Shown here in pieces: positions 7,485 through 64,000 of a DNA stretch of 64,000 bases. Position 1 is the stretch's first letter. Every line of letters begins with the position of its first letter. A program made the translations under genes and the position numbers. Location: positions 162,699-226,698 of IMG/VR virus record IMGVR_UViG_3300025098_000012; one strand, given 5' to 3'. The notes beneath the pieces were generated by a model. The model searched no databases. It was not told the origin of the DNA and saw only the letters and a list, made by a program, of their open reading frames with translations.

Positions 7485-7506
7485 AATAAATCACTCTTCC
7501 TTTCTA

Positions 7507-8100: not shown

Positions 8101-8245
8101 GAGATTTCTCCTATTTAGCTCGTACTCTCTGTTTTCAAGAGAGTAGTGTTGTGTTGAAATAGGGTGGTCTTACAACCAACCCCGAAAAGGTTTTCCAATA
8201 TAATAGCGTCAGATATAAATAAACTATTACAAGTTTATCTATATC

Positions 8246-9814: not shown

Positions 9815-9852
9815 AAGGCTATTCCTTTCTGTGGGGTGAAACAGGGCGAGAC

Positions 9853-11292: not shown

Positions 11293-11295
11293 GCT

Positions 11296-32893: not shown

Positions 32894-33487
32894 TTATTTT
32901 AGCAGGTCATACTCTTCTTTAGAGATATAAACAGGATATGGGTTAGGTTGAATTAGATGAGCGTTGAACTCAACTCCAAAGTGATCACACACTGTCTCAA
33001 TGGCATCGAGGTTCTTCTGAGTATCTTCCCAAACAGACACGCTCTGAATGTTAGGGTATTTCTTGAGGAGATCAAAGGTTAGTTTAGCCTTATAGCGAGA
33101 TGTAGACCCTGTGCCTGGTTTTAGGTGAACCTCATCAAAGTCCAACCCTTTACCCTTTAATAGCTCGGCTACACGATAACGCATAGCACCGTTGTCATTA
33201 AGGCGACCTGTACACATGATCGCAAGAGTGTCCATGTCAGAGATAGAGCGTTTAGCTTCACCAACAACACCATTAAACCAATAATCCCCACTAGGCTTTT
33301 GAGGGATAAAAGGTTCACTTAAACTAATGGCCTCGTTGAACCAATAACCCATTTTTTTGTTCGACCACCACTCTGGTGGTTCGGGGCTACGGAACAATGT
33401 ATTATCAAAGTCAAAGATATGAAGCTCAAGACTTTCTGAGCTTGTTTTCATATACTTTGTTGCCACTCTCGCAACAAGATTTCTCAT
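32894..33487 (-). CDS. HAD-family phosphatase ('Swiss Army Knife' RNA-repair type) with RVA tag
   Basis: MRNLVARVATKYMKTS, then IFDFDNTLF, CTGR, WED; GAGGAG RBS; late motif at 33528. Confidence 0.7.
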   Translation of the reverse strand: MRNLVARVATKYMKTSSESLELHIFDFDNTLFRSPEPPEWWSNKKMGYWFNEAISLSEPFIPQKPSGDYWFNGVVGEAKRSISDMDTLAIMCTGRLNDNGAMRYRVAELLKGKGLDFDEVHLKPGTGSTSRYKAKLTFDLLKKYPNIQSVSVWEDTQKNLDAIETVCDHFGVEFNAHLIQPNPYPVYISKEEYDLLK

Positions 33488-33542
33488 GTCTGTTCTCCTC
33501 AAAGGTAATATACAGAAGTATCTCATAATAAAGGATCTACAA

Positions 33543-34424
33543 ATGTTAATTATACTTTCCCCGACATCACAGTTAGCTACTGACACTCTTAGGCTGTCAA
33601 ATCCTCCTGCACTATCGGTAGAAGCAGAATATGGTGGGTTCGTCCTTGAGGGTACAAAATACACTGCCGCTCATCACCAACCACTCGGATCACCTTATGT
33701 CGGTCGCCATGTCACCCCCTTTGGTAGACCTGCACCTTGTAATGACTCCAATATACCAAAGCTCAATGATAATGAAGTAGCCATCATCTCACACCTCGAC
33801 ATCGACACTCTTGGTGGACTTATGAGAGCTACAGATCAGTTCGAGGATAACCCTGTCTTTTGGTTCTATGCTGAACATATCGACACCAATGGCATCCACA
33901 AGGCAAGACAAGACCACCCCTGTTGGGTTCTATATAATGGACTTAACGCATGGATCAATGAAAACTATCCAGAGATAGACACAAAGAGAAACAACGATGT
34001 GACCGATTTCTGCTACAAAGCATTCGACTTCATTAAAGAAATGCTTAATGACGGTCTGCTTGCTACTCGAATGGGTAATGCTCACATCTATCTCCAAGAA
34101 AAGCTCGATGAGTCCTCCTTTGTAGAGATGAAACCATGTGGTCTGATCGTTAGACGAACAAGAGGTGAAAAGGTAAATCATCTCTATCGTGGAGAAAATG
34201 CGATCATCACTTACGATGAAAAATATAAGAAGATTAGGATTTCTACTGCTGACCCCATTCCAAACCTATCTTGTAGACGACTCGTTCAAGAATGGTGGGG
34301 TGATAGAGCTGGTGGACACGATCAGATCGCAGGTTCTGCAAGAGGCCAAATCATGTCCGAAGATCAGTTTAGGGAGGCAATAGAAAGGTTTGAAACTGAA
34401 CTAACTAGAGCATTACAAAGGTAA
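33543..34424 (+). CDS. DHH-like phosphoesterase
   Basis: SHLDIDTLGG and C-terminal GGHDQIAGS; AAGGA RBS before ATG 33543. Confidence 0.5.
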   Translation: MLIILSPTSQLATDTLRLSNPPALSVEAEYGGFVLEGTKYTAAHHQPLGSPYVGRHVTPFGRPAPCNDSNIPKLNDNEVAIISHLDIDTLGGLMRATDQFEDNPVFWFYAEHIDTNGIHKARQDHPCWVLYNGLNAWINENYPEIDTKRNNDVTDFCYKAFDFIKEMLNDGLLATRMGNAHIYLQEKLDESSFVEMKPCGLIVRRTRGEKVNHLYRGENAIITYDEKYKKIRISTADPIPNLSCRRLVQEWWGDRAGGHDQIAGSARGQIMSEDQFREAIERFETELTRALQR

Positions 34425-39753: not shown

Positions 39754-39898
39754 GTTAAACTCCTTTTAGAGATTGGTTAAACGCATATAAACTAGAGTCA
39801 TATAAACAATCTACAAATCCTGTAACCCCTTATCTATGAGATTGTGTGGGAGAGGTATGTAAGCCTTGCCCAAGCCTTACTCCAACAAGGAGATCCAA

Positions 39899-42025
39899 AT
39901 GAGAGTTTTCAAGAACAAGTTCGCCAAAAAGTGTAATGTCTGTAAGACCCCTGTAGCTGAGGGTGCAGGGTTCACATATCAGCCACAGGGTGGAGCGTAC
40001 ACCACCATCTGCAATAGCTCTGTATGTCTTGACGCAAGTCCTGCACAGGTCAAGGCTCTCCTTAACGCACCCTCTGTGCGTGAGATCAATGCACAAGGTG
40101 AGATCAAGATGCCTTATGAGGCAGACGCTTTACCTATCTTGCGTGGGATGCCTGGAGCAAGGTGGAATGGCGATCTCAAGTGTTGGACTGTAAGTCTTGC
40201 ACCGAAGGATCGTCAGCGTGTGATGGAGGGTGTGCGTAGGCTCAACCTCAGCTTCCCTATCGGCTTCGATGGAGTACAGCAAGATAGCTCTGTCTTAGAT
40301 GCTATCAGTCGAGCCAAAGACGGTGGTGCTTACACCTATCAACTTGATGGGGTCAAGTTCCTGTCAAGCCATGAGAACTGCTTGCTTGCAGATGACATGG
40401 GTCTTGGGAAGACCCTACAGGCACTCATGGCTATCGAGATGGGTGGTCGAGCTATCGTACTTTGCCCTGCAACTTTGAAGCTCAATTGGGCAAACGAGGT
40501 TCGCAAGTGGAGGTCTGACCTCTCTCCAGTGGTCTGTAAAGGTCGCAAGGGGTTCAAGCTCCCTCAAGCGAATGAGGTTGTCATCCTCAACTATGAGATC
40601 CTCCCTACAGAGATGACTCCTACTGACAAGTGGGGTGATGACTCTGAGAATGTACCTCAAGCATGGCGAGATGTGCTTGCTCAAACAACCCTTATCGCTG
40701 ACGAGGCTCACCTCTGTAAGAGCCACAAGGCGATCCGTAGCAAGCGTACTAAGGTTCTCTCCAACCTCTGTAAGAGGAGTTGGGCGATGACTGGAACTCC
40801 CCTCTTGAGCAAAGGTTTTGACCTATGGGGTGTAGTCAGCACCTTCGGAATGGGTCGCACCATCTTCGGTGGCTTCAAGGGGTTCATCCGAGACATGAAC
40901 GCTCATCAAAACTACTATGGTGGATGGGAGTTCGGCACACCTAACCCATGTGTACCAGAGAAGCTCCGTAGGGTCATGCTCCGTAGGACTAAGACTGAGG
41001 TCTTGACCAACCTCCCACCTAAGACCTACCAAGATGTACTTGTCGAGGTAGGCTCAAAGCGACTCCTCAAGATGAGTGAGAAGATGCTTGAGGCAATGAA
41101 GGAGAATGGCTCAAACGCTATCCCCGACTTTAGCGAGTTCAGTCGCATCCGAGCCGAGCTTGCCGAGTCTCGTATCTCTGCCCTTGAAGAGATGGTTGAG
41201 AGCTTCGAGGAGGCTAACGAGCCTGTGGTCGTGTTCTCTGCACACCGATCACCAATCGAGGCTATGGCAAAGCGTGATGGTTGGGCTGTAATCATGGGGG
41301 ATACCGACCAAGATGATCGTGAAGATGCTGTTATGGCTTTCCAAGCTGGAATGCTCAAAGGGATCGCCTGTACCATCAAAGCTGGTGGTGTCGGGATCAC
41401 CCTCACCAAAGCAAGCAAGATGATCTTCTGTGATCAAGAGTGGAATCCTGCTCTTAATCTCCAAGCTGAGGATCGTATCTGTCGTATCGGTCAGACTGCT
41501 TCTAACTTGCAGTACATCCGACTCGTATCGGACTGTGCGATGGATCTTCATGTCCTCAAACTCATAGACAAGAAAAAGGCTCTTATCGAGGCATCAATCG
41601 AGAAAGAGTGTGGAGCGTTGACCTCAACTGCTACCACTAAGGGTGTCGCTATCAAGCAAGAGACTCGTGAGGAGCGTGATGCTCGTATCGCTAAAGCTGT
41701 TCAGCGAGACGCTCAAAACGCTGTCTCTAACCAACTTACAGAGTGGACTAAGGCAATCCCATCAAAGATCCTCAATCGTTCTGTAGACGCTAACCTACAA
41801 GCTCAAATCATCACAGCAAGTGAGTCTCTTGACGGTGCTTGTGATGGGGCAACCGATAAGGACGGAATGGGGTTCAACAAACCCGACAGCTATGTGATGA
41901 AGAACATCAACTCAAGTGGTCTACTCCATGACCTCGATCAGCAAGACTTGCTCAAGTTCGCTTGGTCAAAACTCCTCAAGTATCGGGGTCAAGTAGGAAC
42001 TATCGCACCTAGCCTTTACCTATAA
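39899..42025 (+). CDS. SNF2/SMARCAL1-like SF2 helicase
   Basis: LADDMGLGKT, DEAH, TGTP, LRRTK, NLQAEDRICRIGQ; AAGGAG RBS before ATG 39899. Confidence 0.88.
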   Translation: MRVFKNKFAKKCNVCKTPVAEGAGFTYQPQGGAYTTICNSSVCLDASPAQVKALLNAPSVREINAQGEIKMPYEADALPILRGMPGARWNGDLKCWTVSLAPKDRQRVMEGVRRLNLSFPIGFDGVQQDSSVLDAISRAKDGGAYTYQLDGVKFLSSHENCLLADDMGLGKTLQALMAIEMGGRAIVLCPATLKLNWANEVRKWRSDLSPVVCKGRKGFKLPQANEVVILNYEILPTEMTPTDKWGDDSENVPQAWRDVLAQTTLIADEAHLCKSHKAIRSKRTKVLSNLCKRSWAMTGTPLLSKGFDLWGVVSTFGMGRTIFGGFKGFIRDMNAHQNYYGGWEFGTPNPCVPEKLRRVMLRRTKTEVLTNLPPKTYQDVLVEVGSKRLLKMSEKMLEAMKENGSNAIPDFSEFSRIRAELAESRISALEEMVESFEEANEPVVVFSAHRSPIEAMAKRDGWAVIMGDTDQDDREDAVMAFQAGMLKGIACTIKAGGVGITLTKASKMIFCDQEWNPALNLQAEDRICRIGQTASNLQYIRLVSDCAMDLHVLKLIDKKKALIEASIEKECGALTSTATTKGVAIKQETREERDARIAKAVQRDAQNAVSNQLTEWTKAIPSKILNRSVDANLQAQIITASESLDGACDGATDKDGMGFNKPDSYVMKNINSSGLLHDLDQQDLLKFAWSKLLKYRGQVGTIAPSLYL

Positions 42026-51575: not shown

Positions 51576-51860
51576 TTAATGTTGTCTATGCAGACATCTC
51601 GCCCTAACCTCATTGAGCATAGATTCGATCTTATTAAACTTATCTAAAAATTCTTTATAGGGTCGAAGCACATCTTCATCACTGAGGTTATCGAGCATTT
51701 CAGCGGCATCATCAAAGATTCTTTTAAGATCACGATTTTCACTTAGAAAGTCATGGTTTTCATACTTTTTTCTAAGGTCTACGAGCCTACCTAGATTGTC
51801 ATCTAGGTTTTCTCTCACATCGTGAAACATCTTGGTTTTAGAGACTGCGTTTCTTACCAA
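51576..51860 (-). CDS. Hypothetical protein
   Basis: ORF overlapping the upstream stop; start uncertain. Confidence 0.55.
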   Translation of the reverse strand: MVRNAVSKTKMFHDVRENLDDNLGRLVDLRKKYENHDFLSENRDLKRIFDDAAEMLDNLSDEDVLRPYKEFLDKFNKIESMLNEVRARCLHRQH

Positions 51861-53584
51861 CTTTTTTTTTGATAAGAAGCTCTTCTACGACCACCACTCA
51901 TAGCACCCTCAAGTTTACGGATGAGTTTCTGTAGACCTGCAATGGCTTTACGAGTACGAACTTCAACAGGCTGACGACCTGCACGACCAGTTCCTTGAAT
52001 ACGATCAAGTGCGAGGCGAATGTCGTTCGCAGACTCTTGGGAAAGTTGATCTCGATTAGTGCCGAGTGAACGCTGTGTTGCCATGAGCTGTTGTACAGCT
52101 CGCTCATCAACGATACCGTTATCTTGGAATGAAGCAATCGCCGCACGAACAACAGAAACGGTATCTGTGATCATAGCTTGTGAGTAAGCAATGTCTTGGT
52201 TCTGCCACATTCCAGGATTTGAAGTAAGACCGATTGGATACGAGCCATAGAGAGGACCGCTCTTACGGTGTTCACCTCTCTGTGAATATGCAGAGACATA
52301 ACCCTTCTTGAGCTTAGACTTGAGCTGTTTAACAAAGAAAGCCTGTGCTTCATAAGAGTCCATAAATGATTTATCGGCTCTACGACCCGAAGAACCAAGA
52401 CGACCATAAAGGATTTCTACATCTGATCCGCTAACGACCATCTCGTAGAATTTGCTTTTGTTCTCGGACTCACCGATGAGATAAAGCATACAAGAGGTAG
52501 CCTCTGCCATTGAGCGACCCTCATGATAAGCTGTGCTTGAGCGAACACCTGCGAGTTGTGGCTCACCTGCGGCTTCACGATTCATGCTTGCAGTGCGATT
52601 GAGGTTTGCCTCAAGACGAGCGATCCTCATCTCAAGGTTACGGATTACTTCACTAGCTGATCTTCTCATTTGAGATCCTTTCTTTAGAAGCCTTCTGACT
52701 TCATCTTTAGAGTAAGAGTTGTCGAGCTTACGCTCATTACGATAGATGAGGTGACGCAAACGCTTACGCTCCTCATCATTGAGTGAATCAATGCCTCTAC
52801 GCTGACCTTTATTGATAAGCATAAAGTCATCACGCTCAAGATAGGCATTGGATTTAAGGTCTGCAAGTAGCTTAGATGCTGGAGATGACTGACTAGCAAT
52901 GATTTCTTCAACCACATTCATCTGTCTTTCAGAGAGCTGAATACGATCTTCAGCTTTAGACTTGAGTTGTGCCAAGAAACGATTACGAGGGTCGAGTTCA
53001 AGTGCCTTTTCAATACGGACAAGCTGATTACTTGTCTGATTACCAACCATTTGAGTTTGCATCAGTTTTTCGTCAAGCACTTCAATCTGTCTCTCGGAAA
53101 GCTCTCTACCACCCATAAACTGATCGTAGAGACTTCTGAAAAAACGATTAGTAGGTTGCATCGCAATCGCTTGGTTGAGCTTCGTTAAGATGTCTTGATC
53201 GGGATTCTCAATACGCTCTTCAGTTTCGATTAGGATTTCCTCAACCCTGTAGTGAAGGGGATCTCCTTGTTGAAGCTCATTTAAGATGTCTTTCCACCAA
53301 TCACTATTCGGATTAAGAGCAAGAACTGCTTGAACACGCTCAATGCTCTCTACATCTCTGAACTTACCTGGAAAGTCGATCTTGAGTTGGATGAGTCCAT
53401 CACTGATGGACATATCTCCAAGACTCCTTAACAGAGACACAAGAACATCTGGTCCTTTTTTGTTGAGTTTAACTTCAAAATCGTCAAAGTTAATCATGGC
53501 ATTGTCTCTACGAGACTCCATCTCAAGCATCTCTAGTGCTTCTTCTACTGTGGTATTGTAGAAATATATTTGATTGGCTTTCAT
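51854..53584 (-). CDS. Multidomain late protein: helical repeats + internal MRRSASE leader + WGR domain
   Basis: LSERQ repeats; MRRSASEVIRNLEMRIARLE; SKFYEMVVSGSDVEILYGRLGSSG...QLKSKLKKGY; late motif at 53623. Confidence 0.75.
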   Translation of the reverse strand: MKANQIYFYNTTVEEALEMLEMESRRDNAMINFDDFEVKLNKKGPDVLVSLLRSLGDMSISDGLIQLKIDFPGKFRDVESIERVQAVLALNPNSDWWKDILNELQQGDPLHYRVEEILIETEERIENPDQDILTKLNQAIAMQPTNRFFRSLYDQFMGGRELSERQIEVLDEKLMQTQMVGNQTSNQLVRIEKALELDPRNRFLAQLKSKAEDRIQLSERQMNVVEEIIASQSSPASKLLADLKSNAYLERDDFMLINKGQRRGIDSLNDEERKRLRHLIYRNERKLDNSYSKDEVRRLLKKGSQMRRSASEVIRNLEMRIARLEANLNRTASMNREAAGEPQLAGVRSSTAYHEGRSMAEATSCMLYLIGESENKSKFYEMVVSGSDVEILYGRLGSSGRRADKSFMDSYEAQAFFVKQLKSKLKKGYVSAYSQRGEHRKSGPLYGSYPIGLTSNPGMWQNQDIAYSQAMITDTVSVVRAAIASFQDNGIVDERAVQQLMATQRSLGTNRDQLSQESANDIRLALDRIQGTGRAGRQPVEVRTRKAIAGLQKLIRKLEGAMSGGRRRASYQKKSW

Positions 53585-53649
53585 CACATCTCCTTCGGTT
53601 TGTTTCACAGCAAAGGAGGAGGTATAAATAAACTATAAAAGGTAAAGAT

Positions 53650-54483: not shown

Positions 54484-54750
54484 ATGTCATTACCTAGAGA
54501 ACGAAAAAGAGCTGACTATCGAGTCATTGCTCGCATCTTGCAACTGAGTCATGGACAAGCAGATCCAAAAGACTCATTGCTTGAAAAGATTTCTAATGTA
54601 TTTAATCGTAATGGTGGCTCTTGGGTATTATTCTTTGAAGGACACCCAAAACACAGCAAGCTACTTAAAGTAGTGATAAAAGCTGTCGTAAAACATAAGA
54701 AGGATCAACATGAGCGAAGAACTAGAAGCCAAATCAGTTGGGAAGATTAA
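54484..54750 (+). CDS. Late hypothetical protein
   Basis: Late motif at 54438; GGGGG RBS. Confidence 0.6.
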   Translation: MSLPRERKRADYRVIARILQLSHGQADPKDSLLEKISNVFNRNGGSWVLFFEGHPKHSKLLKVVIKAVVKHKKDQHERRTRSQISWED

Positions 54751-56386
54751 ACCCCGATCAAAAGCGATCACTCGTAAGCTCAATCCTGCCGAGATGAAAT
54801 CGAGGGTCAAAGTGGCGATGACCACAGGAGGCTCTATGATGGGGTCGGGTGGGAACTTCTACTCACCAGAGTTATCTACTGACTTTCTTGAACTACCTCA
54901 AAGTCAAGACGAACAACGCAACTACTTTAGGTTCTTTTATCGCACTGACCCCTTCGTAGGACAGGCGATTGATCTACATACAGAGCTTCCCCTCTCTAAG
55001 ATCAGATTAGGGCTACCTAAAGCTCGCAACCGAGACATGGCTTATGAAGCACTTAGGTTCTGTGAAAAATGGGCGAAGCGAGTCGGACTACTTCACCGAC
55101 TCATAGAAATCTTACATGAGTTCAACCTGCTCGGTGAGGTTTTTGTTTTCTGTGAGGACAATAATCCAGATGTGCCTCAAGAGGTGACACATAGTGGTCG
55201 GAATGTTCTTAAAGAAGATGGCGAAGCGTTTACTGAGTGGACTGAGTATGAGGACTCCCATGAACGAGCTTACAAGTGGCTCAAGAGGAACTATAAAGGG
55301 TGGACAGGTGTTCGTATCCTCCCTCCCGAACAAGTTCACATGGAGAGTTTTCCTTTCACTAGTGAGAAGATCATTCAACTTATTCCCGATAGTAAAACTC
55401 GTGATGTAGTTGAACGAGCTTCGGTTAATGATCCCTCTGCTCTTCGTATTGTAGACTCAATGCCAGGAGATGTTGTAGAAGCTATTCGAGATGGTCGCAA
55501 CATTGACCTCAATACTGATCCCGATCAAGGATCATTCGTTTATTATATGGCTCGTAAGAAATCACAATATGAACCTCGTGGACACTCTATGCTTGAGCGT
55601 TGTCTTCGTATCCTCGTTTATCGAGATAAATTAAGACAAGCCCAAACTTCTATCGCTTCAAGACACATGACTCCTATCCGACTCGTATATGCAGAGGATA
55701 TGGATGCGTCTGATGTTGAAGAGTTGAGAGATCAAGTGGATCTTGCACTACAAGATCCAGACTATTCTATCATCGCTAACTTCCAAGTCTCTTGGGAAGA
55801 GATGGGTGCTGACTCTCGTTTGCTTGAACTATCGGGCGAATATGATATGACAGACCGACAGATGTATGCAGGTCTAGGTGTTACAGAATCTCTGTTATCT
55901 GGTGAGTCTAGTTATAGTGGCGATAGGATCAACTTAGAAGTCATCAACACACGCTATATGCTTATGCGTGAGGTTCTTCAAGAGATGGTTGAAGAGAACA
56001 TCTTGAAGCCAATGTGTAGACGAATGGGTTTCGTTGAAATAGATGAAGATGGTGATGAGGTTGTAGTACACCCAACCCTTAGCTTCACTCGACTTGGATT
56101 GCGTGATAATCAAGATACCTTTGACGCTCTCTTTAACCTGTATCAGAAGGGTTCATTGGACATTGATGTGATCCTAGAACTCCTCAATGTAGATCCTATG
56201 ACAACTAAGGCTAAACTTGAGCGTGATATGTGGACACTCAATGACTCTCAGTTTAACGAAGTTCTGAGAGGGGTCTATGGTGAAGCAGGTCGTATGTTAG
56301 CCGAGAACACAGAAGCGATTGAGATCATCGCTAAGAATCTTGGATTAAAGTACAACCCACCAGAAGATGACGGTGGTCGTTTCTAA
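54710..56386 (+). CDS. Portal protein
   Basis: 558 aa; FFYRTDPFVGQAIDLHTELPLS, EFNLLGEVF, GHSMLERC, QAQTSIA, GVTESLLSGE are typical of large-phage portals. Confidence 0.75.
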   Translation: MSEELEAKSVGKIKPRSKAITRKLNPAEMKSRVKVAMTTGGSMMGSGGNFYSPELSTDFLELPQSQDEQRNYFRFFYRTDPFVGQAIDLHTELPLSKIRLGLPKARNRDMAYEALRFCEKWAKRVGLLHRLIEILHEFNLLGEVFVFCEDNNPDVPQEVTHSGRNVLKEDGEAFTEWTEYEDSHERAYKWLKRNYKGWTGVRILPPEQVHMESFPFTSEKIIQLIPDSKTRDVVERASVNDPSALRIVDSMPGDVVEAIRDGRNIDLNTDPDQGSFVYYMARKKSQYEPRGHSMLERCLRILVYRDKLRQAQTSIASRHMTPIRLVYAEDMDASDVEELRDQVDLALQDPDYSIIANFQVSWEEMGADSRLLELSGEYDMTDRQMYAGLGVTESLLSGESSYSGDRINLEVINTRYMLMREVLQEMVEENILKPMCRRMGFVEIDEDGDEVVVHPTLSFTRLGLRDNQDTFDALFNLYQKGSLDIDVILELLNVDPMTTKAKLERDMWTLNDSQFNEVLRGVYGEAGRMLAENTEAIEIIAKNLGLKYNPPEDDGGRF

Positions 56387-56446: not shown

Positions 56447-56740
56447 ATGAGAAGATCTGCTAGTGAAACTATTAGAAATCTTGAAGATCGTATCGCTCGC
56501 CTTGAAGGTAAGACAGCGAAAATCAACCTCAAATCCCTTGCCAAGCACATAAGTAAAAAAAGAAGCGATGGTACTGGTACTGTTGGCTTTGTGGAATATG
56601 ACGCACGAAGCCAAACAGTAATTTTCCTCAATGGGGACTATGAAGATATAGTAGTACCTGTAGACAAGTTGTTAGCTCAACTTATCCGAGAGGAGATGGG
56701 TAATGACCTGTATGACTTAGAGGGCAACACTATCAGTTAA
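56447..56740 (+). CDS. MRRSASE-leader cassette protein (plus strand; track strand label is wrong)
   Basis: ATGAGAAGATCTGCTAGT at 56447 reads MRRSAS on the + strand, ending TAA at 56738-56740. Confidence 0.85.
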   Translation: MRRSASETIRNLEDRIARLEGKTAKINLKSLAKHISKKRSDGTGTVGFVEYDARSQTVIFLNGDYEDIVVPVDKLLAQLIREEMGNDLYDLEGNTIS

Positions 56741-57249
56741 GAGGATAAAGCCTTATATAGCTTCTCCCACTGACGCACCTTTGAGTCCTCTAGCGATGAG
56801 AGCATATTGAACACCTCCCAATAGCGTAAGGTGTCCTCATAATCCTCTCTCCTAGAGGTTTTCTCGTTTAATAGACCCTCTACCCTACGCATTATCATTT
56901 CTTTGCGTGTAGGGTCTTCGTAGGTGTCCTCAAAGATGTCTTTCTTTGGTTGGTACTTCCACACCTCAAGCCCATACTTGAGTTCTAGGGCTGTGCAAGC
57001 CCTACCAAAGTCAAGACCCTCTTTTTCCATTACCGTAGCGATGGAGTCTCGCACCTTACCACAGGCGAAACAGAACCAAGTGTTTGTCTCTGGATAAACA
57101 CGAGCTGAGGGTGCGTTATCCGATCCATCCCCATGTAAGTCGCACCTAAACTGTTGTTGGTTGGTGTGTCCATGCACATCATAGTTATAAGCACTTAATA
57201 CTGAGAGAATAGGTATCTTCTCTTTGATTCTTTCGGCTCTTTTGCTCAT
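56737..57249 (-). CDS. Stand-alone CHC2 primase zinc-binding-domain protein
   Basis: FRCDLHGDGSDNAPSARVYPETNTWFCFACG; no TOPRIM domain. Confidence 0.8.
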   Translation of the reverse strand: MSKRAERIKEKIPILSVLSAYNYDVHGHTNQQQFRCDLHGDGSDNAPSARVYPETNTWFCFACGKVRDSIATVMEKEGLDFGRACTALELKYGLEVWKYQPKKDIFEDTYEDPTRKEMIMRRVEGLLNEKTSRREDYEDTLRYWEVFNMLSSLEDSKVRQWEKLYKALSS

Positions 57250-58442: not shown

Positions 58443-58519
58443 ACGACATTATACAATAAATAAGGGGTTACAGTTGTAGTTTCTTTATCGCTCTCAATAT
58501 AAAGAAAAAGGAGCTTACT

Positions 58520-60382
58520 ATGCAGAATATAACTAGTAGAATAAGACCACCAAGAGCAGTAGTCGAACAGATCGAAGAATACCTATTAAGCCAAGTCGGG
58601 GTATACGAAACCCTTAATCTAAATGTTAATGTTCCCCCACCTCCAAGAACTCGTGGTTATGTAGAGGACTTAGACTTGAGAGTGGAGATAATTCCTCCTC
58701 ATGCGTCTGAAAAATATAATAGAGTTGAAGCTAAATATGACTCTACGAACTCTGTTCTTTATGTGAACCTCCCCTACTTTGAAAAAAAATATGAGGGAAG
58801 GGAACTAGCAGAAGCTCTTTACAGAGTAGTCGCTCACGAGCTAGTTCATGTATATCAAATCCTTTATACTAGATCACGAGATGGCGATCCGAGATCTGAC
58901 TCTCCAACAGCAGGGCTTCCTGGACTTAGAGAGAGAACCCCACAATATAGACAGGAAACAGGTGAGATACTTGACCATCGTTTAGACGACAATGAGTTTT
59001 ACCCACGCTTAGAGGACACCATCAATGCAATCAACTTTGTAGCGAGAACAAGGCAAGATGAGATAGCGAGTATCATTTCTTATGTTGTAGGTGAGTCAAA
59101 ACGACCAGCGTACCGTTCTAAGCACTTAAGAGAGCCTATGGCATGGCTTGAAGACTTAGGGAAGTACGCACCTAAAAAGTTCCTCAAAGCTGTGAGAAAG
59201 ATCAAGAACGAGTTCCCCGAAACAGCAAAAATGCGTACTGCCGATTTCTTTAGGCAGGTTAGTCCTCCCGATGAGTTAAGTACCTTTAGTAATGGAACAC
59301 CCACAGGTAAAGGAACAGACCTTAAAGACAAAGGTGAAGGCTCTCAAATGCCAAATGGAGATGGAGCTAGGAATATAGGTCGCCCTAGCCCCGACTCCCC
59401 TAACCTTAAATCAAGAAATCTTGATCGCTCTGAGTCTTATGGTCGTAAGCCTGCTGAGGGATTTGATGGAGGTTATGTGCATGATAGTGGTAGCGGTAGT
59501 GCTAGGGTTATCCCTTATGATAGTGGTTTTGCGAACAACTCATCTCCTTTGAGAAAAGCGTCAAAGCGTGTTGCTCACAGATACTTAGATTCATTAAAAG
59601 CACCTTCGATGAAGACATCGGCAAGACCGATACGCATTGATAAAGCTAAGATCAAAGAGATGACTAAGGATGCGATCAAAACCCTTGAGGACATAGTTAA
59701 GAAAACTAAGGAGGAAACCTTATCCAAAGCTATCAAACGCAAGACGAGAGACGGAACTATATTTCTAGGTAGCTACCTAGATTCTGGTTCCTCTATTGAG
59801 ATTCAGATCATGGTCAAAGAAACGCACGAAAATGGGCAGTACATCTACAATCCACAAAGGGGTTTGCATGAGATCGAAATCTATCTTGCAGATAGAACCG
59901 TCAAAGAACTGACTCACCCTTATCTGTATAAAATGTCAATAAGACCAGCGATGGTTAAGCACATATACTCTATTCTCATACATGAGATTACTCATGCCGT
60001 TGAGCGAATCCGATACTTGCAGACTGACGAGGACTTGCTAGGCTTTGGTTTAAATCAAGGATCTAGGTTTGATAAGGCAAAGATCAAGACACGCAAAGAC
60101 AAAGATAAGGTATTAAAGGCGTATTACAATGACCCTAGCGAGGTTAAGGCTTACCTCCAACAGATTGCTGATGAAGTAGAGGAATACCTTAACCAAAAGC
60201 ATGGAGGGCTGTCTAAAGAATCCCTACAGTCTGGTTGGAGAGATTCTTTTGGTTATTACGGTTCTAAGACTTGGGATCAAGTTTCTAAATACCTCACCCC
60301 AAAGAACCAAAAGTATATCAAGAAAGCAGTGCTCTCACATCTCATAGAGACCATAGACTCAAAGGAATCAACCAATGGCTAA
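58520..60382 (+). CDS. Polyprotein-like late protein with two HExxH metallopeptidase-like modules
   Basis: AHELVHVYQ...DDNEFY and IHEITHAVE...DPSEVKAY; RTAD, RKAS, RVAHRYL, KTSA boundaries; late motif at 58476. Confidence 0.75.
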   Translation: MQNITSRIRPPRAVVEQIEEYLLSQVGVYETLNLNVNVPPPPRTRGYVEDLDLRVEIIPPHASEKYNRVEAKYDSTNSVLYVNLPYFEKKYEGRELAEALYRVVAHELVHVYQILYTRSRDGDPRSDSPTAGLPGLRERTPQYRQETGEILDHRLDDNEFYPRLEDTINAINFVARTRQDEIASIISYVVGESKRPAYRSKHLREPMAWLEDLGKYAPKKFLKAVRKIKNEFPETAKMRTADFFRQVSPPDELSTFSNGTPTGKGTDLKDKGEGSQMPNGDGARNIGRPSPDSPNLKSRNLDRSESYGRKPAEGFDGGYVHDSGSGSARVIPYDSGFANNSSPLRKASKRVAHRYLDSLKAPSMKTSARPIRIDKAKIKEMTKDAIKTLEDIVKKTKEETLSKAIKRKTRDGTIFLGSYLDSGSSIEIQIMVKETHENGQYIYNPQRGLHEIEIYLADRTVKELTHPYLYKMSIRPAMVKHIYSILIHEITHAVERIRYLQTDEDLLGFGLNQGSRFDKAKIKTRKDKDKVLKAYYNDPSEVKAYLQQIADEVEEYLNQKHGGLSKESLQSGWRDSFGYYGSKTWDQVSKYLTPKNQKYIKKAVLSHLIETIDSKESTNG

Positions 60383-62336
60383 AAATGTACCTACCGATGA
60401 GAAGTTATGGACTGAGATACAATCTCTAGCTAAAGGTGAGTCTAGTAAGCCTGTTTCTAGGGGTAAAGAGTCTGTCAATCCTGTGAATGATGGGAAAGGG
60501 TTTGAAACTTTCCCATCGGCTTATGCTAACGGTTGGGCTTTGGCTCAGTACAAGCGACTAGGTGGTAAGTGGAAAAAGGAATCTAAAAAAGCAGGTCTGA
60601 TAAGACCTCCAAAACATATTGTAGATAAAGTTTCAGAGATACTGACGGCAGGGTTTGCTTCTTATTGGGTTGGGAAGCAAAAGGAAATGGATAATAAACC
60701 GTATTTATCTATATCTCTTGAAAAGATCTCTAACTTTGAAAACCTTATCGAAGATTTAGATGAAGCGTATATGTCCGTAAGGATGAAACGAGCTACTTTT
60801 GATGAATTGGAAAGAGCTTTAAGAGCTTTGAGAGTATCGACTCAAGAGCTTATAGATATGTTTAAAGGGCGAATACCTCCTACCCTTGAAAAGATGAGTC
60901 ATATTTTAGAAAACATGAGTCCGATTAGTGTCTTTGAAGAACCTAAAAAATATAAAAAAGAATTTATGTTTTTAGGTAGGACATTCGGTTTAATTTCAGA
61001 GTTGAGATCTCTGAGACAAGATCCTGTTTCTTACATCTCAGAGAAATCAAGGGCATTATATGAGGGTGAAGCTAATAAAGTTAAAAGGTTTGATAAATTC
61101 TTAGATCGACCTTCTCAATCGACATGGATTTTTCAAACAGAAGATTTAGGCACACTTCGGTTACAAGTAAGAGAATCTAAGGGTGCTAAGGGTTTAGCGT
61201 ATTATCGTTATGATGAAATTGATGATCTACATACAATAACCGTTAGGGTGTTTCCTAACTCCAATGACTTGAGTGGGGAAGATCTAGGTAAGATTAAAGA
61301 TTATGTACGGCATGAGTTAGTTCATGCTATGCAAAAAAAAATGTCATTGGACTTCAATGTTGATCAAGCAGGTATTCCTTTCCAAAAGCGAGATATGACT
61401 TACTTGCAAGGACATAAATACAAAGAAAAAGACCTTAAAGCTCAATATGAAAGAGAGGGTCTTGACTCAGATTTGGTAAGTATCCATGCACTTGATGACA
61501 TCGAGTTTTATACGAGACTTTTAGATGAAGTGGTGGAATTTCAGAGACTTAATGTGAGTGGTTCAGACCTTAATCAAGAGGTGCATGAGTGGGTGTCCAA
61601 AAGAAAATTTTTTGTAAGTTTAAAAAGGTTTAAGAAAAAGAATTGGAACAAGGCTGTTGGTATTTTCTTTGAAGCAGTCAGTTCTAATCGAAAGTATGCT
61701 CGTAAGTGGGACAAAGATCATTGTGAGTCTAAGAGTTGCGATGAGATGGGCTTCTCTGAAAAGGCTTCATGTCGCCCCTATAAGAACTGCTACGAGAAGT
61801 CAGCGTCCTCCAAAGTTAAACCCATGTACTTAGGTTCAGAAAGTGGAGCGATGGCTTACGATTTCTACTTTATGCGTGTGGAAAAGGATTACTATTACCA
61901 CTACACATACAGAGATCGTGCCGAAGAAATAATAGAGGATGGTTATTTAAGACCCAATTTCTACAACGATCAACCAGGAGGACAAGGTGTTTTTGCCATC
62001 TCTGGATCTTATGGACAAGAGGTCACAGACCTTCAAGTCAGTGGTTCTAGGAAAAAACACATGGATAGGATAGTTGCCCTCAAGTTTAAGACTAAAACTG
62101 AGCCTAAGTATGGATACCCCGAAGAAATCATTTGGGATAAACCTGTGAAACTTATTCGACCAGAGATTGTTAGCTTTTCGGAAGCTGAGGCAGACATTAA
62201 GAGGAATGAGGACTTAGGAGAATACTTCAAGGTATTTTACGACTTTAAGAAGGCTGTCGAGATTAAAAAAGAATATGGAACAGTGATCTCTAGGGTTGCT
62301 CACAGATACTTAAGGAATCTAAAAAATGAAACATAA
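60375..62336 (+). CDS. Polyprotein-like protein: small basic module, HExxH module, Cys module, ART-like module
   Basis: FPSAYANGW; RHELVHAMQ...DDIEFY; WDKDHC...MGFSEKASC; YHYTY...IIEDGYLRP; terminal RVAHRYL. Confidence 0.75.
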   Translation: MAKNVPTDEKLWTEIQSLAKGESSKPVSRGKESVNPVNDGKGFETFPSAYANGWALAQYKRLGGKWKKESKKAGLIRPPKHIVDKVSEILTAGFASYWVGKQKEMDNKPYLSISLEKISNFENLIEDLDEAYMSVRMKRATFDELERALRALRVSTQELIDMFKGRIPPTLEKMSHILENMSPISVFEEPKKYKKEFMFLGRTFGLISELRSLRQDPVSYISEKSRALYEGEANKVKRFDKFLDRPSQSTWIFQTEDLGTLRLQVRESKGAKGLAYYRYDEIDDLHTITVRVFPNSNDLSGEDLGKIKDYVRHELVHAMQKKMSLDFNVDQAGIPFQKRDMTYLQGHKYKEKDLKAQYEREGLDSDLVSIHALDDIEFYTRLLDEVVEFQRLNVSGSDLNQEVHEWVSKRKFFVSLKRFKKKNWNKAVGIFFEAVSSNRKYARKWDKDHCESKSCDEMGFSEKASCRPYKNCYEKSASSKVKPMYLGSESGAMAYDFYFMRVEKDYYYHYTYRDRAEEIIEDGYLRPNFYNDQPGGQGVFAISGSYGQEVTDLQVSGSRKKHMDRIVALKFKTKTEPKYGYPEEIIWDKPVKLIRPEIVSFSEAEADIKRNEDLGEYFKVFYDFKKAVEIKKEYGTVISRVAHRYLRNLKNET

Positions 62337-64000
62337 GTCTTTAATCGAAAAGGTGGCCCAACGCTATTTAGAGTCTGTAAAGCGTGATGATCCTAAAAAA
62401 AAGAACACTGGTAAGGGTGGGTTAGGTACTTGGTTTGCAGGGCATGGTGGTGGAGATCCCGATGATCGTGCTACATGGGGCGATTGGATTGCTATAACAC
62501 CTGTAAAACACACTATCAAAAAAGAAGATGGAGAGGACAAGACCTATGAACCAGGAGACATTGTTGGCCCATGTGCCATATCTAGTGAAAAAGAGTGGTC
62601 AGATGTTACAAGTGGGGGAAAAAAACCCCTCAAGTGTATGCCACGAGAAAAAGCATGGAAAATGCCCAAGAAAGACCGAGCCGAGATTGCCAAAAAGAAA
62701 AGGCGGGAAGAAGCGAAGCATCGTGGGAAGAAGCCTGTTAATACTCCGACTTTCTCTGATGAAGCTAAAGAGATCACAGAGAAAAAGAAGAAGACTTCTG
62801 GCTTAATCAGACCTCCAAAACACATTGTAGATCAAGTAGCAGAAATAGGTAAAGGATTACTCGCCCAATACTGGATTAAAAGGGAAAAAGAGGATAGCTC
62901 CAAAGGTGGACTAGATCCAGAGTCTGTTGAGGGTCTTGAGTGGATACTTGAGGATCTTGATTATCTGCCACTTGGGGTCAAAAGAGGTGAACATGATGAG
63001 GAAGAAGTGATCTTCCAAGTCAGAAATGTACAGAGAGCTTTTTCCGAGATAGATGAACAGATGGAATCTGCAAACCTCAAATACTCAGACTTCCACAAAA
63101 TCAAGACAAAGATAGATCAGCTCGATGCACAGAGCATCTTTAATGACCCAAGAGGGAATAAGGCTCTCATCGGGTCTATCTCGGATAGGGCATCTGATTT
63201 ACTTCGTGAGTTTAAAAAATGGTCAACAGGGAGTAAACAATACATCCCCACCTTAATGCGTAATGACTACCTTGAAGCTGTCGAACGACTGTCAAAGTAC
63301 AAGGTCAAGGACAGTGGTAGATACTATGTTGAAGATGATGAGCTAGGCTTAGTGGCAGTACATCTTCAAGAGTCCTCACATGGTGCGGCTCAATACTATT
63401 GGGATGGTATTCACCACATCATATTTAATGTTCTCAAGAATATGACTGAACTCCCTCTCAAGTATTTAACAGATCGAGAAACGATAGCAGGACATGAGCT
63501 AGTTCATGCAATGCAACAACATTACGCTAATAAAGCGAACATAGAGGAAGCAGGATTACCAAGTCAGAAAAGAGATGAACAGTTTCGTTTTGACATGAAG
63601 GAGAAACAGAAAGAGCTGAGAGTCCAATATGCTAGAGAGGGGATGGATTTTGAGCTGATCTCTATCCATGCGTTAGATGACATAGAGTTTTACTCTCGCC
63701 TACTCGATGAGGTTACTGAGTTCAAAAGACGCAATAAGGGTCTTAATGATGAAATACATAAATGGGTAAAAAAACGACCTTTTTTTGTAAGTCTTAAGAG
63801 ATTTAAGCGTAGGAATTGGAAAAAAGCAGTAGGCATCTTTGTTGATGCTGTGCAACTTAAAGCTAAGTCAGCTAGTCGGGTAGCTCATCTCTATTTGCAA
63901 GCGGCTGCTCAACCTGCACAAGACCTAGCAGGTGTCAAAACATGGGTCGATAAAACCCGACAAGACCAAATCAATAACGATACCTCTACCCCAAATAAAT
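62326..64000 (+). CDS. Partial polyprotein-like protein with HExxH module (runs off the window)
   Basis: Hand translation MKHKSLIEKVAQRYL...KKTSGLIRPPKHIVD...GHELVHAMQ...HALDDIEFYSRLLDEV...KSASRVAHLYL; not in the track. Confidence 0.8.
   Translation, partial: MKHKSLIEKVAQRYLESVKRDDPKKKNTGKGGLGTWFAGHGGGDPDDRATWGDWIAITPVKHTIKKEDGEDKTYEPGDIVGPCAISSEKEWSDVTSGGKKPLKCMPREKAWKMPKKDRAEIAKKKRREEAKHRGKKPVNTPTFSDEAKEITEKKKKTSGLIRPPKHIVDQVAEIGKGLLAQYWIKREKEDSSKGGLDPESVEGLEWILEDLDYLPLGVKRGEHDEEEVIFQVRNVQRAFSEIDEQMESANLKYSDFHKIKTKIDQLDAQSIFNDPRGNKALIGSISDRASDLLREFKKWSTGSKQYIPTLMRNDYLEAVERLSKYKVKDSGRYYVEDDELGLVAVHLQESSHGAAQYYWDGIHHIIFNVLKNMTELPLKYLTDRETIAGHELVHAMQQHYANKANIEEAGLPSQKRDEQFRFDMKEKQKELRVQYAREGMDFELISIHALDDIEFYSRLLDEVTEFKRRNKGLNDEIHKWVKKRPFFVSLKRFKRRNWKKAVGIFVDAVQLKAKSASRVAHLYLQAAAQPAQDLAGVKTWVDKTRQDQINNDTSTPNK

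What the first reader, a model, noticed from the sequence alone, without database searches (positions are those of the whole stretch)
58520..64000. Tandem array of polyproteins carrying four paralogous HExxH metallopeptidase-like modules
Seen: HELVH (58835), HEITH (59981), HELVH (61311) and HELVH (63493), each followed by a conserved Glu motif (DDNEFY, DPSEV, DDIEFY twice). Three start with IRPP. Modules 3 and 4 are highly similar (SIHALDDIEFY.RLLDEV, FFVSLKRFK..NW.KAVGIF). They are interleaved with small basic/Cys modules and separated by tag and cleavage sites. Established: zincin-like peptidases are common in injected phage 'polyvalent' conflict proteins. Inference: diversified anti-defence proteases delivered with the DNA.
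Basis: partly seen in the sequence, partly recalled or inferred. Interest (0 to 1): 0.75.

Follow-up and report, generated by a model that had tools for sequence, protein, structure and literature searches.

The report
Tagged HExxH modular proteins, huge phage
An uncultured huge marine phage has an operon of multi-domain proteins, next to its portal gene, with four copies of an undescribed zinc-protease-like (HExxH) domain separated by a conserved short peptide tag; this looks like a new variant of the "polyvalent" proteins that phages pack into the head and deliver with their DNA.

Summary
All four HExxH motifs, their downstream Glu motifs and the three IRPP starts sit at the stated coordinates. 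Shuffling the three proteins gives 0.1 HExxH where 4 are seen.

Three modules belong to one family (type A). The fourth, HEITH, is a distant paralogue (type B; hhalign 92.5%).

The three ORFs overlap start-on-stop. A longer copy of the same phage shows a 775-aa third protein and a fourth gene (basic tail plus Dps/ferritin-like domain).

The type A core matches no Pfam family and was not found in 50,697 GenBank phages. It has over 1,100 metagenomic sequence clusters, often fused to ART-like, SOD, PAP2, TopoIB, NTase or LigD domains.

AlphaFold models are confident and have zincin-like topology. Matches to known zincins are weak, and none to a solved structure is significant.

A tag, S-R-V-A-x-R-Y-L, marks module junctions and protein ends (65 seen, 1.6 expected).

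The operon has the same promoter-like motif as the major-capsid operon. In a relative the homologue lies inside the head-gene block.

Best reading: head-packaged polyvalent-type proteins whose metallopeptidase-like modules process tagged chains and/or host targets. Packaging, cleavage and any anti-defence role are inferred, not shown.

The parts
58477..58488 (+). Promoter-like motif TAGTTTCTTTAT, 43 nt before the p1 start codon
   Evidence: TAGTTTnTTTAT occurs 23 times in the 226-kb record against 0.33 expected. 22 of the 23 lie 20-157 nt upstream of an ATG-initiated ORF on the same strand. One precedes the g197-major-capsid operon (window 8226, minus strand) and several precede the RRSAS-tag genes.
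58520..60382 (+). p1, 620 aa: type A HExxH module, disordered linker, tag, type B HExxH module
   Evidence: ORF; domain limits.
58520..59230 (+). p1 type A module (aa 1-237), short form without the helical bundle. RIRPP at 58538, HELVH at 58835, AGLP at 58910, DDNEFY at 58985
   Evidence: Core HMM E 2.5e-24. Atlas structure neighbours are Zn_peptidase (PF04228), M78, M76 and DUF885, TM 0.37-0.48.
59567..59587 (+). Junction tag RVAHRYL (p1 aa 350-356)
   Evidence: Tag regex [KRNH][VI]AxxY[LMIQ]: 65 hits in 231 family proteins against 1.6 in shuffles. Logo.
59603..60379 (+). p1 type B HExxH module (aa 362-620). ARPIRID at 59621, HEITH at 59981, DPSEVKA at 60131
   Evidence: Alignment A3 has invariant HExTH and N-x3-E. 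hhalign against type A: 92.5%, E 4.9e-7. In many homologues type B follows directly after a type A core.
60375..62336 (+). p2, 653 aa; start overlaps the p1 stop by 8 nt (ATGGCTAA)
60375..60584 (+). p2 N-terminal small domain (aa 1-70), DUF5872-like
   Evidence: PF19197 E 0.017, below cut-off. 40% identity to a hypothetical protein of Synechococcus phage S-BM3. 80-90% identical copies head many family proteins.
60594..61706 (+). p2 type A module (aa 74-444): LIRPP at 60597, four-helix bundle 60612-61103, core 61122-61706 with HELVH at 61311, AGIP at 61368, DDIEFY at 61494
   Evidence: AF2 model with alignment A1: pLDDT 89.8, pTM 0.76. Four strands, then the HExxH helix, then the helix carrying the Glu. 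Invariant residues.
61707..61808 (+). p2 Cys-rich linker (aa 445-478)
   Evidence: Read from the sequence. The ending ...CRPYKNCY... recurs just before tags in homologues.
61812..62282 (+). p2 C-terminal domain (aa 480-636), possibly ADP-ribosyltransferase-like
   Evidence: Atlas leads only: DarT, PARP, DUF952, DUF2971 and DUF3990, TM 0.44-0.47. No Pfam hit.
62292..62312 (+). C-terminal tag RVAHRYL (p2 aa 640-646), followed by RNLKNET and the stop
   Evidence: Eleven family proteins carry the tag within 20 aa of their C-terminus.
62326..64000 (+). p3, cut by the contig end. Full length 775 aa on an identical 345-kb contig (L004 10001-12328). Start overlaps the p2 stop by 11 nt
   Evidence: The window and L004 are identical over 5,481 bases.
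62350..62370 (+). N-terminal tag KVAQRYL (p3 aa 9-15)
   Evidence: In P0004 the p2-type C-terminal domain and the p3-type small domain are joined in one ORF through a single tag.
62383..62775 (+). p3 small Gly/Cys/basic domain (aa 20-150)
   Evidence: phrog_23735 E 1e-3. Begins ...KRDDPKKKN..., which follows the tag in many homologues.
62797..63873 (+). p3 type A module (aa 158-516): LIRPP at 62803, HELVH at 63493, AGLP at 63550, DDIEFY at 63676
   Evidence: 38% identical to the p2 module. Core HMM E 5.6e-71.
63877..63897 (+). Junction tag RVAHLYL (p3 aa 518-524). Beyond the window come a disordered stretch and a 100-aa tail that is 43% Lys+Arg

Best explanation
The region is the first three genes of a four-gene, translationally coupled operon (p1-p4) of an uncultured huge marine tailed phage. 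It encodes 'beads-on-a-string' proteins of the polyvalent-protein kind.

Four beads are copies of an undescribed HExxH...E domain family, in two distantly related subtypes: type A three times and type B once. The family is most likely a minimal gluzincin-type zinc metallopeptidase. The other beads are a DUF5872-like domain, a Gly/Cys/basic domain, a possibly ART-like domain, very basic tails and, in p4, a Dps/ferritin-like domain.

Every bead is bounded by a short conserved tag, (K)n-[AS]-S-[AS]-S-R-V-A-x-R-Y-L. The same tag heads or ends other proteins of this phage.

Proposed mechanism (inferred):
1. The operon is expressed together with the capsid genes.
2. The tagged chains are loaded into the prohead.
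3. The metallopeptidase modules cut the chains at or near the tags, in the head or after ejection, in cis or in trans. This releases the individual modules that travel with the DNA.
4. A second role for the peptidase modules, against host proteins, is possible.

Shown: the paralogy, the family and its fusions, the tag and its enrichment, the overlapping genes, the shared promoter-like motif and the head-gene neighbourhood.

Inferred: zinc binding and proteolysis, packaging, cleavage at the tag, delivery.
For: 1. Paralogy. Three type A modules and one type B module are paralogous, with all catalytic-type residues intact. H, E, H, Q(+3), G and the Glu-Phe of DDxEFY are invariant across 78 further distant members.

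2. Structure. The AF2 models are confident (pLDDT 89.8 and 92.0). They show a beta-sheet, then a long HExxH helix, then a later helix carrying the invariant Glu. Named structural neighbours are almost all zincin families:
- M48, IrrE/M78, DUF4932, Peptidase MA-like and DUF2268;
- M3, MA-like, SprT, BSP and YgjP;
- Zn_peptidase, M78, M76 and DUF885;
- polyvalent, N4 virion RNA polymerase and SprT proteins in BFVD, best E 1.4e-3.

3. Family and fusions. There are 1,102 clusters at E<=1e-3. Fusion partners are PAP2, DUF5856/Dps-like, SOD, GNAT and ART-PolyVal, and TopoIB, PolyA_pol NTase, 2H, LigD-PE/PrimPol and M23 in proteins of up to 3,381 aa.

4. The tag.
- 65 hits against 1.6 expected; of 63 distinct instances 40 are internal, 12 N-terminal and 11 C-terminal.
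- Gene boundaries fall at tags. p2 ends with one and p3 starts with one, while P0004 has the two parts fused through a single tag.
- Ten hits in the phage's own record, at least one probably chance (KIANAYL). Several are in proteins without HExxH, including the 1081-aa protein of the head block and, in L006, its homologue between portal and protease.

5. Head context.
- The portal is 2.1 kb upstream.
- In L006 the homologue lies 1.2 kb after the major capsid gene, within a portal-protease-scaffold-capsid block.
- The p1 promoter-like motif is shared with the capsid operon.

6. Gene coupling and tails. Start and stop codons overlap by 8, 11 and 8 nt. The tails are 32-43% Lys+Arg.

7. Literature. 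Iyer et al. 2017 (PMC5512222) describe zincin-like MPTases as the hub domain of phage polyvalent proteins and propose processing of the multidomain chains.
Against: - No Pfam family matches. MPTase-PolyVal and LPD23 give nothing at E<=10, and SprT-like reaches 15.5 bits against a cut-off of 25.6.
- The complex prediction of module + Zn + tag peptide gave no answer.
- The phage has its own head maturation protease (window 9853-11292, phrog_18299). That enzyme could do any trimming at the tags.
- The tag is kept intact on both sides of split genes. That fits a targeting peptide better than a mere scissile site.
- In this phage the capsid genes are 40 kb from the portal, so gene neighbourhood is weaker evidence here than in L006.
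- There is no proteomic, expression or host information.
Confidence: 0.5

Rival explanations
1. The HExxH modules are themselves the payload: diversified proteases injected with the DNA that cut host defence or other host proteins. The variable four-helix bundle before each core would choose the substrate.
For: - Four paralogues in tandem, and over 1,100 clusters in the family.
- The N-terminal bundle varies while the core is conserved.
- Most family members are single-module proteins of about 430 aa with an N-terminal tag, which do not need to process a polyprotein.
- Iyer et al. list this as one possible role of MPTases.
Against: - No target, no defence-system context and no host are known.
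- The conserved tag at every junction points to processing or loading of the phage's own chains.
- The zincin assignment itself is weak.
Confidence: 0.2
2. The tag is a capsid-loading peptide, like the T4 capsid targeting sequence or an encapsulin cargo peptide. It is bound by the prohead interior and trimmed, if at all, by the phage's own head maturation protease. The HExxH modules are then just one kind of cargo and do not act on the tags.
For: - The tag sits at the N- or C-termini of otherwise unrelated proteins, including proteins of the head-gene block.
- It is kept on both products of a gene split.
- A dedicated head protease is present.
- Cargo types such as Dps/ferritin-like and SOD recall encapsulin cargo. 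That comparison is from my own knowledge and was not tested.
Against: - Forty of 63 tags are internal. A terminal loading peptide does not need that unless the chains are also cut.
- No interaction could be tested.
Confidence: 0.15
3. The HExxH domain is not a peptidase. It would be another metal-dependent enzyme (for example an HExxH-type oxygenase or hydrolase) or a purely structural metal-binding module.
For: - There is no significant structural or profile match to any characterised peptidase.
- One of the top, non-significant PDB hits is the HExxH domain of a 2-oxoglutarate-dependent oxygenase, 8s5f, E 0.23, TM 0.22.
Against: - The invariant set HExxH plus a downstream Glu on a helix, after a beta-sheet, is the gluzincin signature.
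- Nearly all named structural neighbours are peptidase families.
Confidence: 0.1
4. The proteins are not packaged at all. They would be intracellular late proteins (for example assembly chaperones or scaffold-like factors) that happen to lie near the portal gene.
For: - Gene order in this phage is scrambled; the capsid genes are 40 kb from the portal.
- The promoter-like motif also precedes genes that need not be structural.
Against: - The position next to head genes is conserved in a second arrangement, L006.
- The tails are extremely basic.
- The domain repertoire is of the polyvalent type.
Confidence: 0.15

Closest known systems
Polyvalent proteins of phages and conjugative elements, with zincin-like MPTase domains (Iyer, Burroughs, Anantharaman & Aravind 2017, PMC5512222)
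   Same: - Several unrelated enzymatic or binding domains in one chain.
- One to five HExxH metallopeptidase-like domains interspersed between the other domains.
- ART and GNAT partners.
- Late/virion gene context.
- The same proposed logic: processing of a multidomain chain that is delivered with the DNA.
   Different: - The HExxH domains here do not match Pfam MPTase-PolyVal or any LPD model.
- The chains are split over four overlapping genes.
- Every module is bounded by a conserved SRVAxRYL tag. I did not search the paper for such a junction motif; none appears in the passages read.
- Partners such as SOD, Dps/ferritin-like, PAP2 and TopoIB are prominent.
MPTase-bearing virion proteins: phage N4 virion RNA polymerase and phage P1 DdrB (as discussed in PMC5512222)
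   Same: Large head-packaged proteins carrying a zincin-like domain. BFVD structure hits include N4-like virion RNA polymerases and polyvalent proteins.
   Different: Those hits are weak (E 0.1-0.4), and there is no sequence similarity. There is no RNA polymerase or ParB-like domain here.
Internal/ejection proteins of T4 (capsid targeting sequence, cut by gp21) and of giant phages SPN3US and phiKZ (paralogous ejection proteins cut by the prohead protease; PMC3012670, PMC7411985, PMC10052503). Listed by the search but not read; the comparison is from my own knowledge
   Same: - Families of paralogous proteins carried inside a large head.
- A short conserved peptide that marks them.
- A dedicated prohead protease in the same genome.
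   Different: - The tag here (SRVAxRYL) is unlike the Glu-ending cleavage motifs of T4 or phiKZ-type phages.
- It is found inside chains and at C-termini as well as at N-termini.
- The cargo itself carries protease-like domains.
Minimal gluzincins and related zincin families (M48/M56, M78 ImmA/IrrE, SprT/Wss1, M76, PF04228)
   Same: HExxH on a long helix after a small beta-sheet, with a Glu on a later helix. These families are the recurrent named structural neighbours.
   Different: - TM-scores are only 0.34-0.5 and no profile match reaches significance.
- Signature extras are specific to this family: HExxHxxQ, AGLP and HxLDDxEFY.
- Type A usually carries an N-terminal four-helix bundle.

Membership tests
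Zincin / gluzincin metallopeptidase superfamily | HExxH motif on an alpha-helix | tested here: met
   All four modules keep H-E-x-x-H. It is invariant in alignments A1-A4 and lies in helix 235-260 of the AF2 model.
Zincin / gluzincin metallopeptidase superfamily | Third metal ligand (Glu) on a helix downstream of HExxH | tested here: inconclusive
   An invariant Glu (in DDxEFY for type A, N-x3-E-V-K-A for type B) sits 50-66 residues after HExxH on a predicted helix.
Zincin / gluzincin metallopeptidase superfamily | Mixed beta-sheet immediately before the active-site helix | tested here: met
   Four strands (module residues 184-226) precede the HExxH helix in a model with pLDDT 89.8.
Zincin / gluzincin metallopeptidase superfamily | Significant structural similarity to a solved zincin | tested here: not met
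Zincin / gluzincin metallopeptidase superfamily | Zinc binding and peptide-bond hydrolysis | not testable with these tools
   This needs biochemistry. The complex prediction that included Zn returned no usable answer.
Pfam MPTase-PolyVal (PF18818) | Match to the family model above its cut-off (27.5 bits) | tested here: not met
   No match at E<=10 in six frames of the whole 226-kb record, while the control genomes did match. Also absent from hmmscan of p1-p3 and of 39+78 family members.
Pfam SprT-like (PF10263) and LPD23 (PF18838) | Match above the curated cut-off | tested here: not met
   SprT-like: 15.5 bits against 25.6, over the HExxH residues only; 3 of 78 members at E >= 0.03. LPD23: nothing at E<=10.
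Polyvalent proteins sensu Iyer et al. 2017 | Two or more unrelated conflict-type domains in one polypeptide, with a metallopeptidase-like hub domain | tested here: met
   p1 has type A plus type B. p2 has DUF5872-like, type A and a possibly ART-like domain. p3 has a small domain, type A and a basic tail. Relatives fuse the core to ART-PolyVal, GNAT, SOD, PAP2, TopoIB, NTase, 2H and LigD domains.
Polyvalent proteins sensu Iyer et al. 2017 | Phage late/virion gene context | tested here: met
   The portal is 2.1 kb upstream. The homologue in L006 sits directly after the capsid gene. The promoter-like motif is shared with the capsid operon.
Polyvalent proteins sensu Iyer et al. 2017 | Packaging into the virion and delivery into the host | not testable with these tools
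   There is no cultured relative with the family: no hit in 50,697 GenBank phages, and none in phage G or Tunturi_5.
Head maturation (prohead) protease | Being the phage's capsid maturation protease | tested here: not met
   A separate gene fills that role: window 9853-11292 (minus strand), phrog_18299 'head maturation protease', E 1.8e-15, next to the scaffold-like and capsid genes.
Capsid-targeting / cargo-loading peptides (T4 CTS, encapsulin cargo peptides) | Short conserved terminal peptide shared by otherwise unrelated packaged proteins | tested here: inconclusive
   A shared tag exists on unrelated proteins, at termini and at junctions. Binding to the capsid, or removal of the tag, could not be tested.

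The most novel reading that the evidence does not exclude
SRVAxRYL is a general address-and-cut label of a clade of huge marine phages. It would load a whole toolbox of enzymes into the capsid: Dps/ferritin-like, superoxide dismutase, phosphatases, ART-like and DNA/RNA-repair domains. A dedicated, previously undescribed family of tag-specific metallopeptidases, itself carried as cargo, would then cut the strings into working pieces on delivery. In effect this is a viral polyprotein strategy inside a tailed-phage head.
Probability: 0.2. Interest if true: 0.8.

Novelty: new variant of a known kind. Interest (0 to 1): 0.55.

Why it matters
Polyvalent, head-delivered proteins are thought to be a main way for phages to act on a host at the moment of DNA entry. 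How the long chains are loaded and cut is still only a proposal.

This locus offers three things:
- a large HExxH family (over 1,100 sequence clusters) that matches no Pfam or PHROG family and no searched phage record;
- a sharply defined junction and terminal tag, which gives a concrete, testable candidate for the loading or cleavage signal;
- a link between huge marine phages and cargo such as Dps-like, SOD and repair enzymes.

If the tag-protease pairing holds, it would give a handle for predicting virion cargo from sequence in uncultured huge phages.

Tried and rejected
- Pfam and PHROGs on whole proteins, on pieces, and on 39 and 78 family members: no family for the HExxH cores.
- Direct tests of PF18818 and PF18838 on the genome: nothing.
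- Profile searches against PDB sequences: A1 hit only coiled-coil noise from the helical bundle; A2 and A3 gave marginal HExxH-only hits to BepA, proabylysin and a neutral protease.
- Fold searches with the whole module were swamped by four-helix bundles.
- I spent the second structure prediction on a core-only construct. It was cut inside the beta-sheet and matched nothing. A construct starting about 20 residues earlier would have been better.
- Complex prediction (module + Zn + tag peptide): 'no answer', so not used as evidence.
- Search for cultured relatives: tblastn of p2, a stand-alone member and a giant-protein segment against GenBank phages found only the DUF5872-like piece in Synechococcus phage S-BM3.
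- The type A profile finds nothing in LR745208, phage G or Tunturi_5. A local HMM scan of all of LR745208 did find a type B homologue (E 7e-20) and other divergent tagged HExxH ORFs.
- So my test of whether tags exist without the protease family was not discriminating.
- Sigma-70 promoter and terminator scans of the operon were at or below the shuffle expectation.
- Read-through or frameshift joining of the ORFs was considered. It is not needed: the overlaps are ordinary ATG/stop overlaps in different frames.

Full report
**What the window is**

The window is the last 64 kb of a 226,698-bp viral record that ends at window base 64000. The portal protein (54710-56386, phrog_16240 E 8e-32) is 71% identical to that of the 485-kb uncultured phage LR745208. 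It is more distantly related to the portals of Tunturiibacter phage Tunturi_5 and Bacillus phage G. So this is an uncultured huge tailed phage. An identical stretch on a 345-kb JGI contig (L004, 0 mismatches in 5,481 bases) supplies what lies beyond the window.

**The observation**

Three ORFs fill the region:
- p1, 58520-60382, 620 aa;
- p2, 60375-62336, 653 aa;
- p3, 62326 onward, 775 aa in full.

A fourth gene, p4 (349 aa), follows in L004. Consecutive genes overlap by 8, 11 and 8 nt in ATG...stop fashion, which indicates one translationally coupled operon.

Four HExxH in 2,048 residues compare with 0.096 in shuffles. Half of all HExxH-bearing long ORFs of the 226-kb record are in this array.

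**Paralogy**

- p2 67-444 and p3 152-518 are 38% identical (E 9e-69).
- A profile of the roughly 165-aa core finds p1 residues 66-237 at E 2.5e-24. It finds the HEITH region only at E 0.012.
- The HEITH module has its own set of about 20 relatives (type B). They share an invariant HExTH and an N-x3-E-V-K-A motif.
- A profile-profile comparison of type A and type B gives 92.5% probability, E 4.9e-7 over 125 columns, with HExxH and the downstream Glu in register.

So all four are homologous, as three close copies and one distant copy. In many relatives a type B module follows directly after a type A core.

**The family**

- The type A core has the invariant pattern HExxHxxQ ... AGLP ... HxLDDxEFY. 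H, E, H, Q, G and the Glu-Phe remain invariant in 78 further, more distant members.
- No Pfam or PHROG family matches it. The MPTase-PolyVal and LPD23 models find nothing in the genome.
- An exhaustive profile search finds 1,102 clusters at E<=1e-3 and 576 at E<=1e-10.
- None is detectable in 50,697 GenBank phage records, nor in phage G or Tunturi_5.
- LR745208 lacks a detectable type A. It does have a type B homologue and other divergent HExxH ORFs of about 450 aa, one of them with an N-terminal tag.
- Many members are single modules of about 430 aa. Others are long chains in which the core is fused to PAP2, DUF5856/Dps-like, superoxide dismutase, GNAT or ART-PolyVal domains.
- In proteins of 1,100-3,400 aa the core is fused to topoisomerase IB, a PolyA_pol-type nucleotidyltransferase, 2H phosphoesterase, LigD phosphoesterase/PrimPol and M23 peptidase domains.

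This is the architecture that Iyer et al. 2017 called polyvalent proteins. In those proteins, zincin-like metallopeptidases are the commonest hub domain and are proposed to process the chains (PMC5512222).

**Is it a zincin?**

With a 39-sequence alignment, AlphaFold2 models the p2 module at pLDDT 89.8 and pTM 0.76. In order along the chain the model has:
- an ordered N-terminal segment (LIRPP...);
- a four-helix bundle;
- a four-stranded sheet;
- a long helix carrying HExxH;
- several more helices, one of which carries the invariant Glu.

That order is the zincin order. Automated comparisons, however, are weak:
- The whole module attracts only helical-bundle matches in the PDB.
- A core-only model (pLDDT 92), which I cut inside the sheet, matches nothing.
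- In libraries of predicted structures, the named neighbours of the core region are almost all zincin families. AFDB gives M48, IrrE/M78, DUF4932, Peptidase MA-like and DUF2268 at E 0.025-0.14.
- The ESM Atlas gives M3, MA-like, SprT, BSP and YgjP at TM 0.26-0.46. For the compact p1 module it gives Zn_peptidase, M78, M76 and DUF885 at TM 0.37-0.48.
- BFVD gives unnamed phage proteins and a Serratia phage BF 'structural protein' at E about 1e-3. Polyvalent, N4 virion RNA polymerase and SprT proteins appear further down.

My reading is that a gluzincin-like metallopeptidase is the most likely assignment. It rests on motif, topology and a consistent set of weak neighbours, not on a significant match.

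**The tag**

A short motif, R-V-A-x-R-Y-L preceded by a Lys- and Ser-rich stretch, occurs at p1 aa 350, p2 aa 640 (seven residues before the stop), p3 aa 9 and p3 aa 518.

- In 231 family proteins it occurs 65 times against 1.6 in shuffles. Of 63 distinct instances, 40 are internal and lie at module borders, 12 are within 25 residues of the N-terminus and 11 within 20 residues of the C-terminus.
- In stand-alone members the protein starts M-x(5-10)-RVAxRYL-x(3-6)-AG(I/L)(I/L)xxPP. In other words, the tag directly precedes the 'IRPP' start of the module.
- Gene boundaries coincide with tags. p2 ends with a tag and p3 begins with one. In P0004 the same two parts are one ORF joined by a single tag.
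- The tag regex hits ten times in the phage's own record, at least one probably by chance (KIANAYL). Several hits are in proteins without HExxH: three small proteins, a HAD-like phosphatase, and the 1081-aa protein of the head-gene block. The L006 homologue of that 1081-aa protein, between portal and protease, carries two tags.

The tag is therefore a general label of a set of proteins of this phage clade, not a feature of the HExxH domain alone.

**Context**

- The head maturation protease (window 9853-11292, minus strand) and the major capsid protein (6606-7484, minus strand) are identified by PHROGs. So the HExxH modules are not the canonical capsid protease.
- In a 143-kb relative (L006) the order is portal, the tagged protein, protease, scaffold-like gene, capsid gene and then, 1.2 kb on, the HExxH protein.
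- In this phage that block is 40 kb from the portal, and the array follows the portal instead.
- A motif TAGTTTnTTTAT occurs 23 times in the record against 0.33 expected. 22 of the 23 lie 20-157 nt upstream of an ATG-initiated ORF on the same strand. One is 43 nt before p1 and one precedes the operon that holds the capsid gene.
- The p3 C-terminal 100 residues are 43% Lys+Arg and the first 110 residues of p4 are 32%. p4 ends in a Dps/ferritin-like domain (phrog_3636 E 9e-13; PF19174 E 1e-5, below cut-off).
- The p2 C-terminal domain has ART-superfamily leads only: DarT, PARP, DUF952 and DUF3990.

**Explanation**

The best-supported reading is an operon of head-associated polyvalent-type proteins. 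Their modules are marked by a shared tag, and four of the modules are metallopeptidase-like. I think the most likely job of these modules is to cut tagged chains, their own and perhaps those of other tagged proteins. A direct attack on host proteins is a live alternative.

The retention of the tag on both sides of split genes, and on termini of unrelated proteins, argues that it is at least partly an address (a loading signal) and not just a scissile bond. Which protease, if any, acts on it cannot be decided here. The one interaction prediction I could run gave no answer.

Nothing here shows packaging, cleavage, injection or anti-defence activity.

**Verdict**

The finding is a new variant of a known kind: polyvalent phage proteins with zincin-like hubs. 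It adds an undescribed, large HExxH family and a sharply defined junction tag. Interest is moderate to good.

Noticed in passing
window 56447 (+), 5103 (-), 2379 (-), 50138 (-), 52666 (- strand, internal); L004 14445, 14688, 15611, 16019: A second tag family. At least 13 copies of M-R-R-S-A-S-E-x-I-x-N-L-E-x-R-I-A-R-L-E in at least 12 genes; most open a small ORF, three are internal. Several share a conserved ~65-nt upstream block (TAGTTTATTTATACCCTCTCATAAGTGATC...), so promoter, leader and N-terminal tag seem to travel as one cassette.
   Followed up: partly
whole record; in the window at 58477, 56387, 8226 (-), 5163 (-), 2439 (-), 15245 (-), 24207 (-), 26152 (-), 36249 (-), 43035 (-), 49623 (-), 50138 (-), 53635 (-): Promoter-like motif TAGTTTnTTTAT: 23 copies against 0.33 expected. 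22 lie 20-157 nt upstream of an ATG-initiated ORF on the same strand; the copy just outside the window (genome 162464, minus strand) has none. Probably a phage-specific (late or middle) promoter class.
   Followed up: partly
window 6606-14541 (-) versus 54710-56386 (+): The head-gene block is about 40 kb from the portal gene and on the other strand. It comprises the capsid gene, g197, a scaffold-like gene, the protease and the 1081-aa tagged protein. In relatives L006 and LR745208 the portal and this block are contiguous.
   Followed up: partly
window 11296-14541 (-): The 1081-aa protein of the head block is highly charged and mostly low-complexity. It ends with a conserved domain, an RVASRYM tag and a four-Cys zinc-ribbon. 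This C-terminal part is conserved in LR745208 and L006.
   Followed up: partly
window 32894-33664 (-): A HAD-like phosphatase (DFDNTLF motif) with an N-terminal RVATKYM tag. Its LR745208 homologue is fused, through a similar tag-like motif, to a domain that reads as topoisomerase IB-like by eye (not scanned) and lies right after the portal.
   Followed up: no
L004 12321-13370 (p4) and L004 17502-22328: Just beyond the window lies p4, with a 32% Lys+Arg N-terminal region and a Dps/ferritin-like domain. It is followed by four RRSAS-tag genes and a protein of more than 2,311 aa with no Pfam hit on record.
   Followed up: partly
LR745208.1 ORFs at 21635 (+), 462936 (+), 203053 (-), 278024 (-), 64640 (+), 452397 (+): The 485-kb relative has a type B homologue (E 7e-20). 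It also has several other ORFs, of 226-560 aa, with an HExxH motif that the type A profiles do not detect; three (442-560 aa) have it near residue 290-320. One has an N-terminal RVAGRYL tag. The tagged-HExxH theme may therefore be wider than the family defined here.
   Followed up: partly
window 39866-42025 (+): The local G+C bump (0.51 against about 0.43) coincides with an ORF that reads as a SNF2-type helicase (GLGKT and DEAH motifs by eye; no family scan was run). Nothing unusual.
   Followed up: yes
window 56737-57249 (-) and 51854-53608 (-): Between and around the portal and the array lie a DnaG-type zinc-ribbon protein and a WGR-domain protein that carries an internal RRSAS tag.
   Followed up: no
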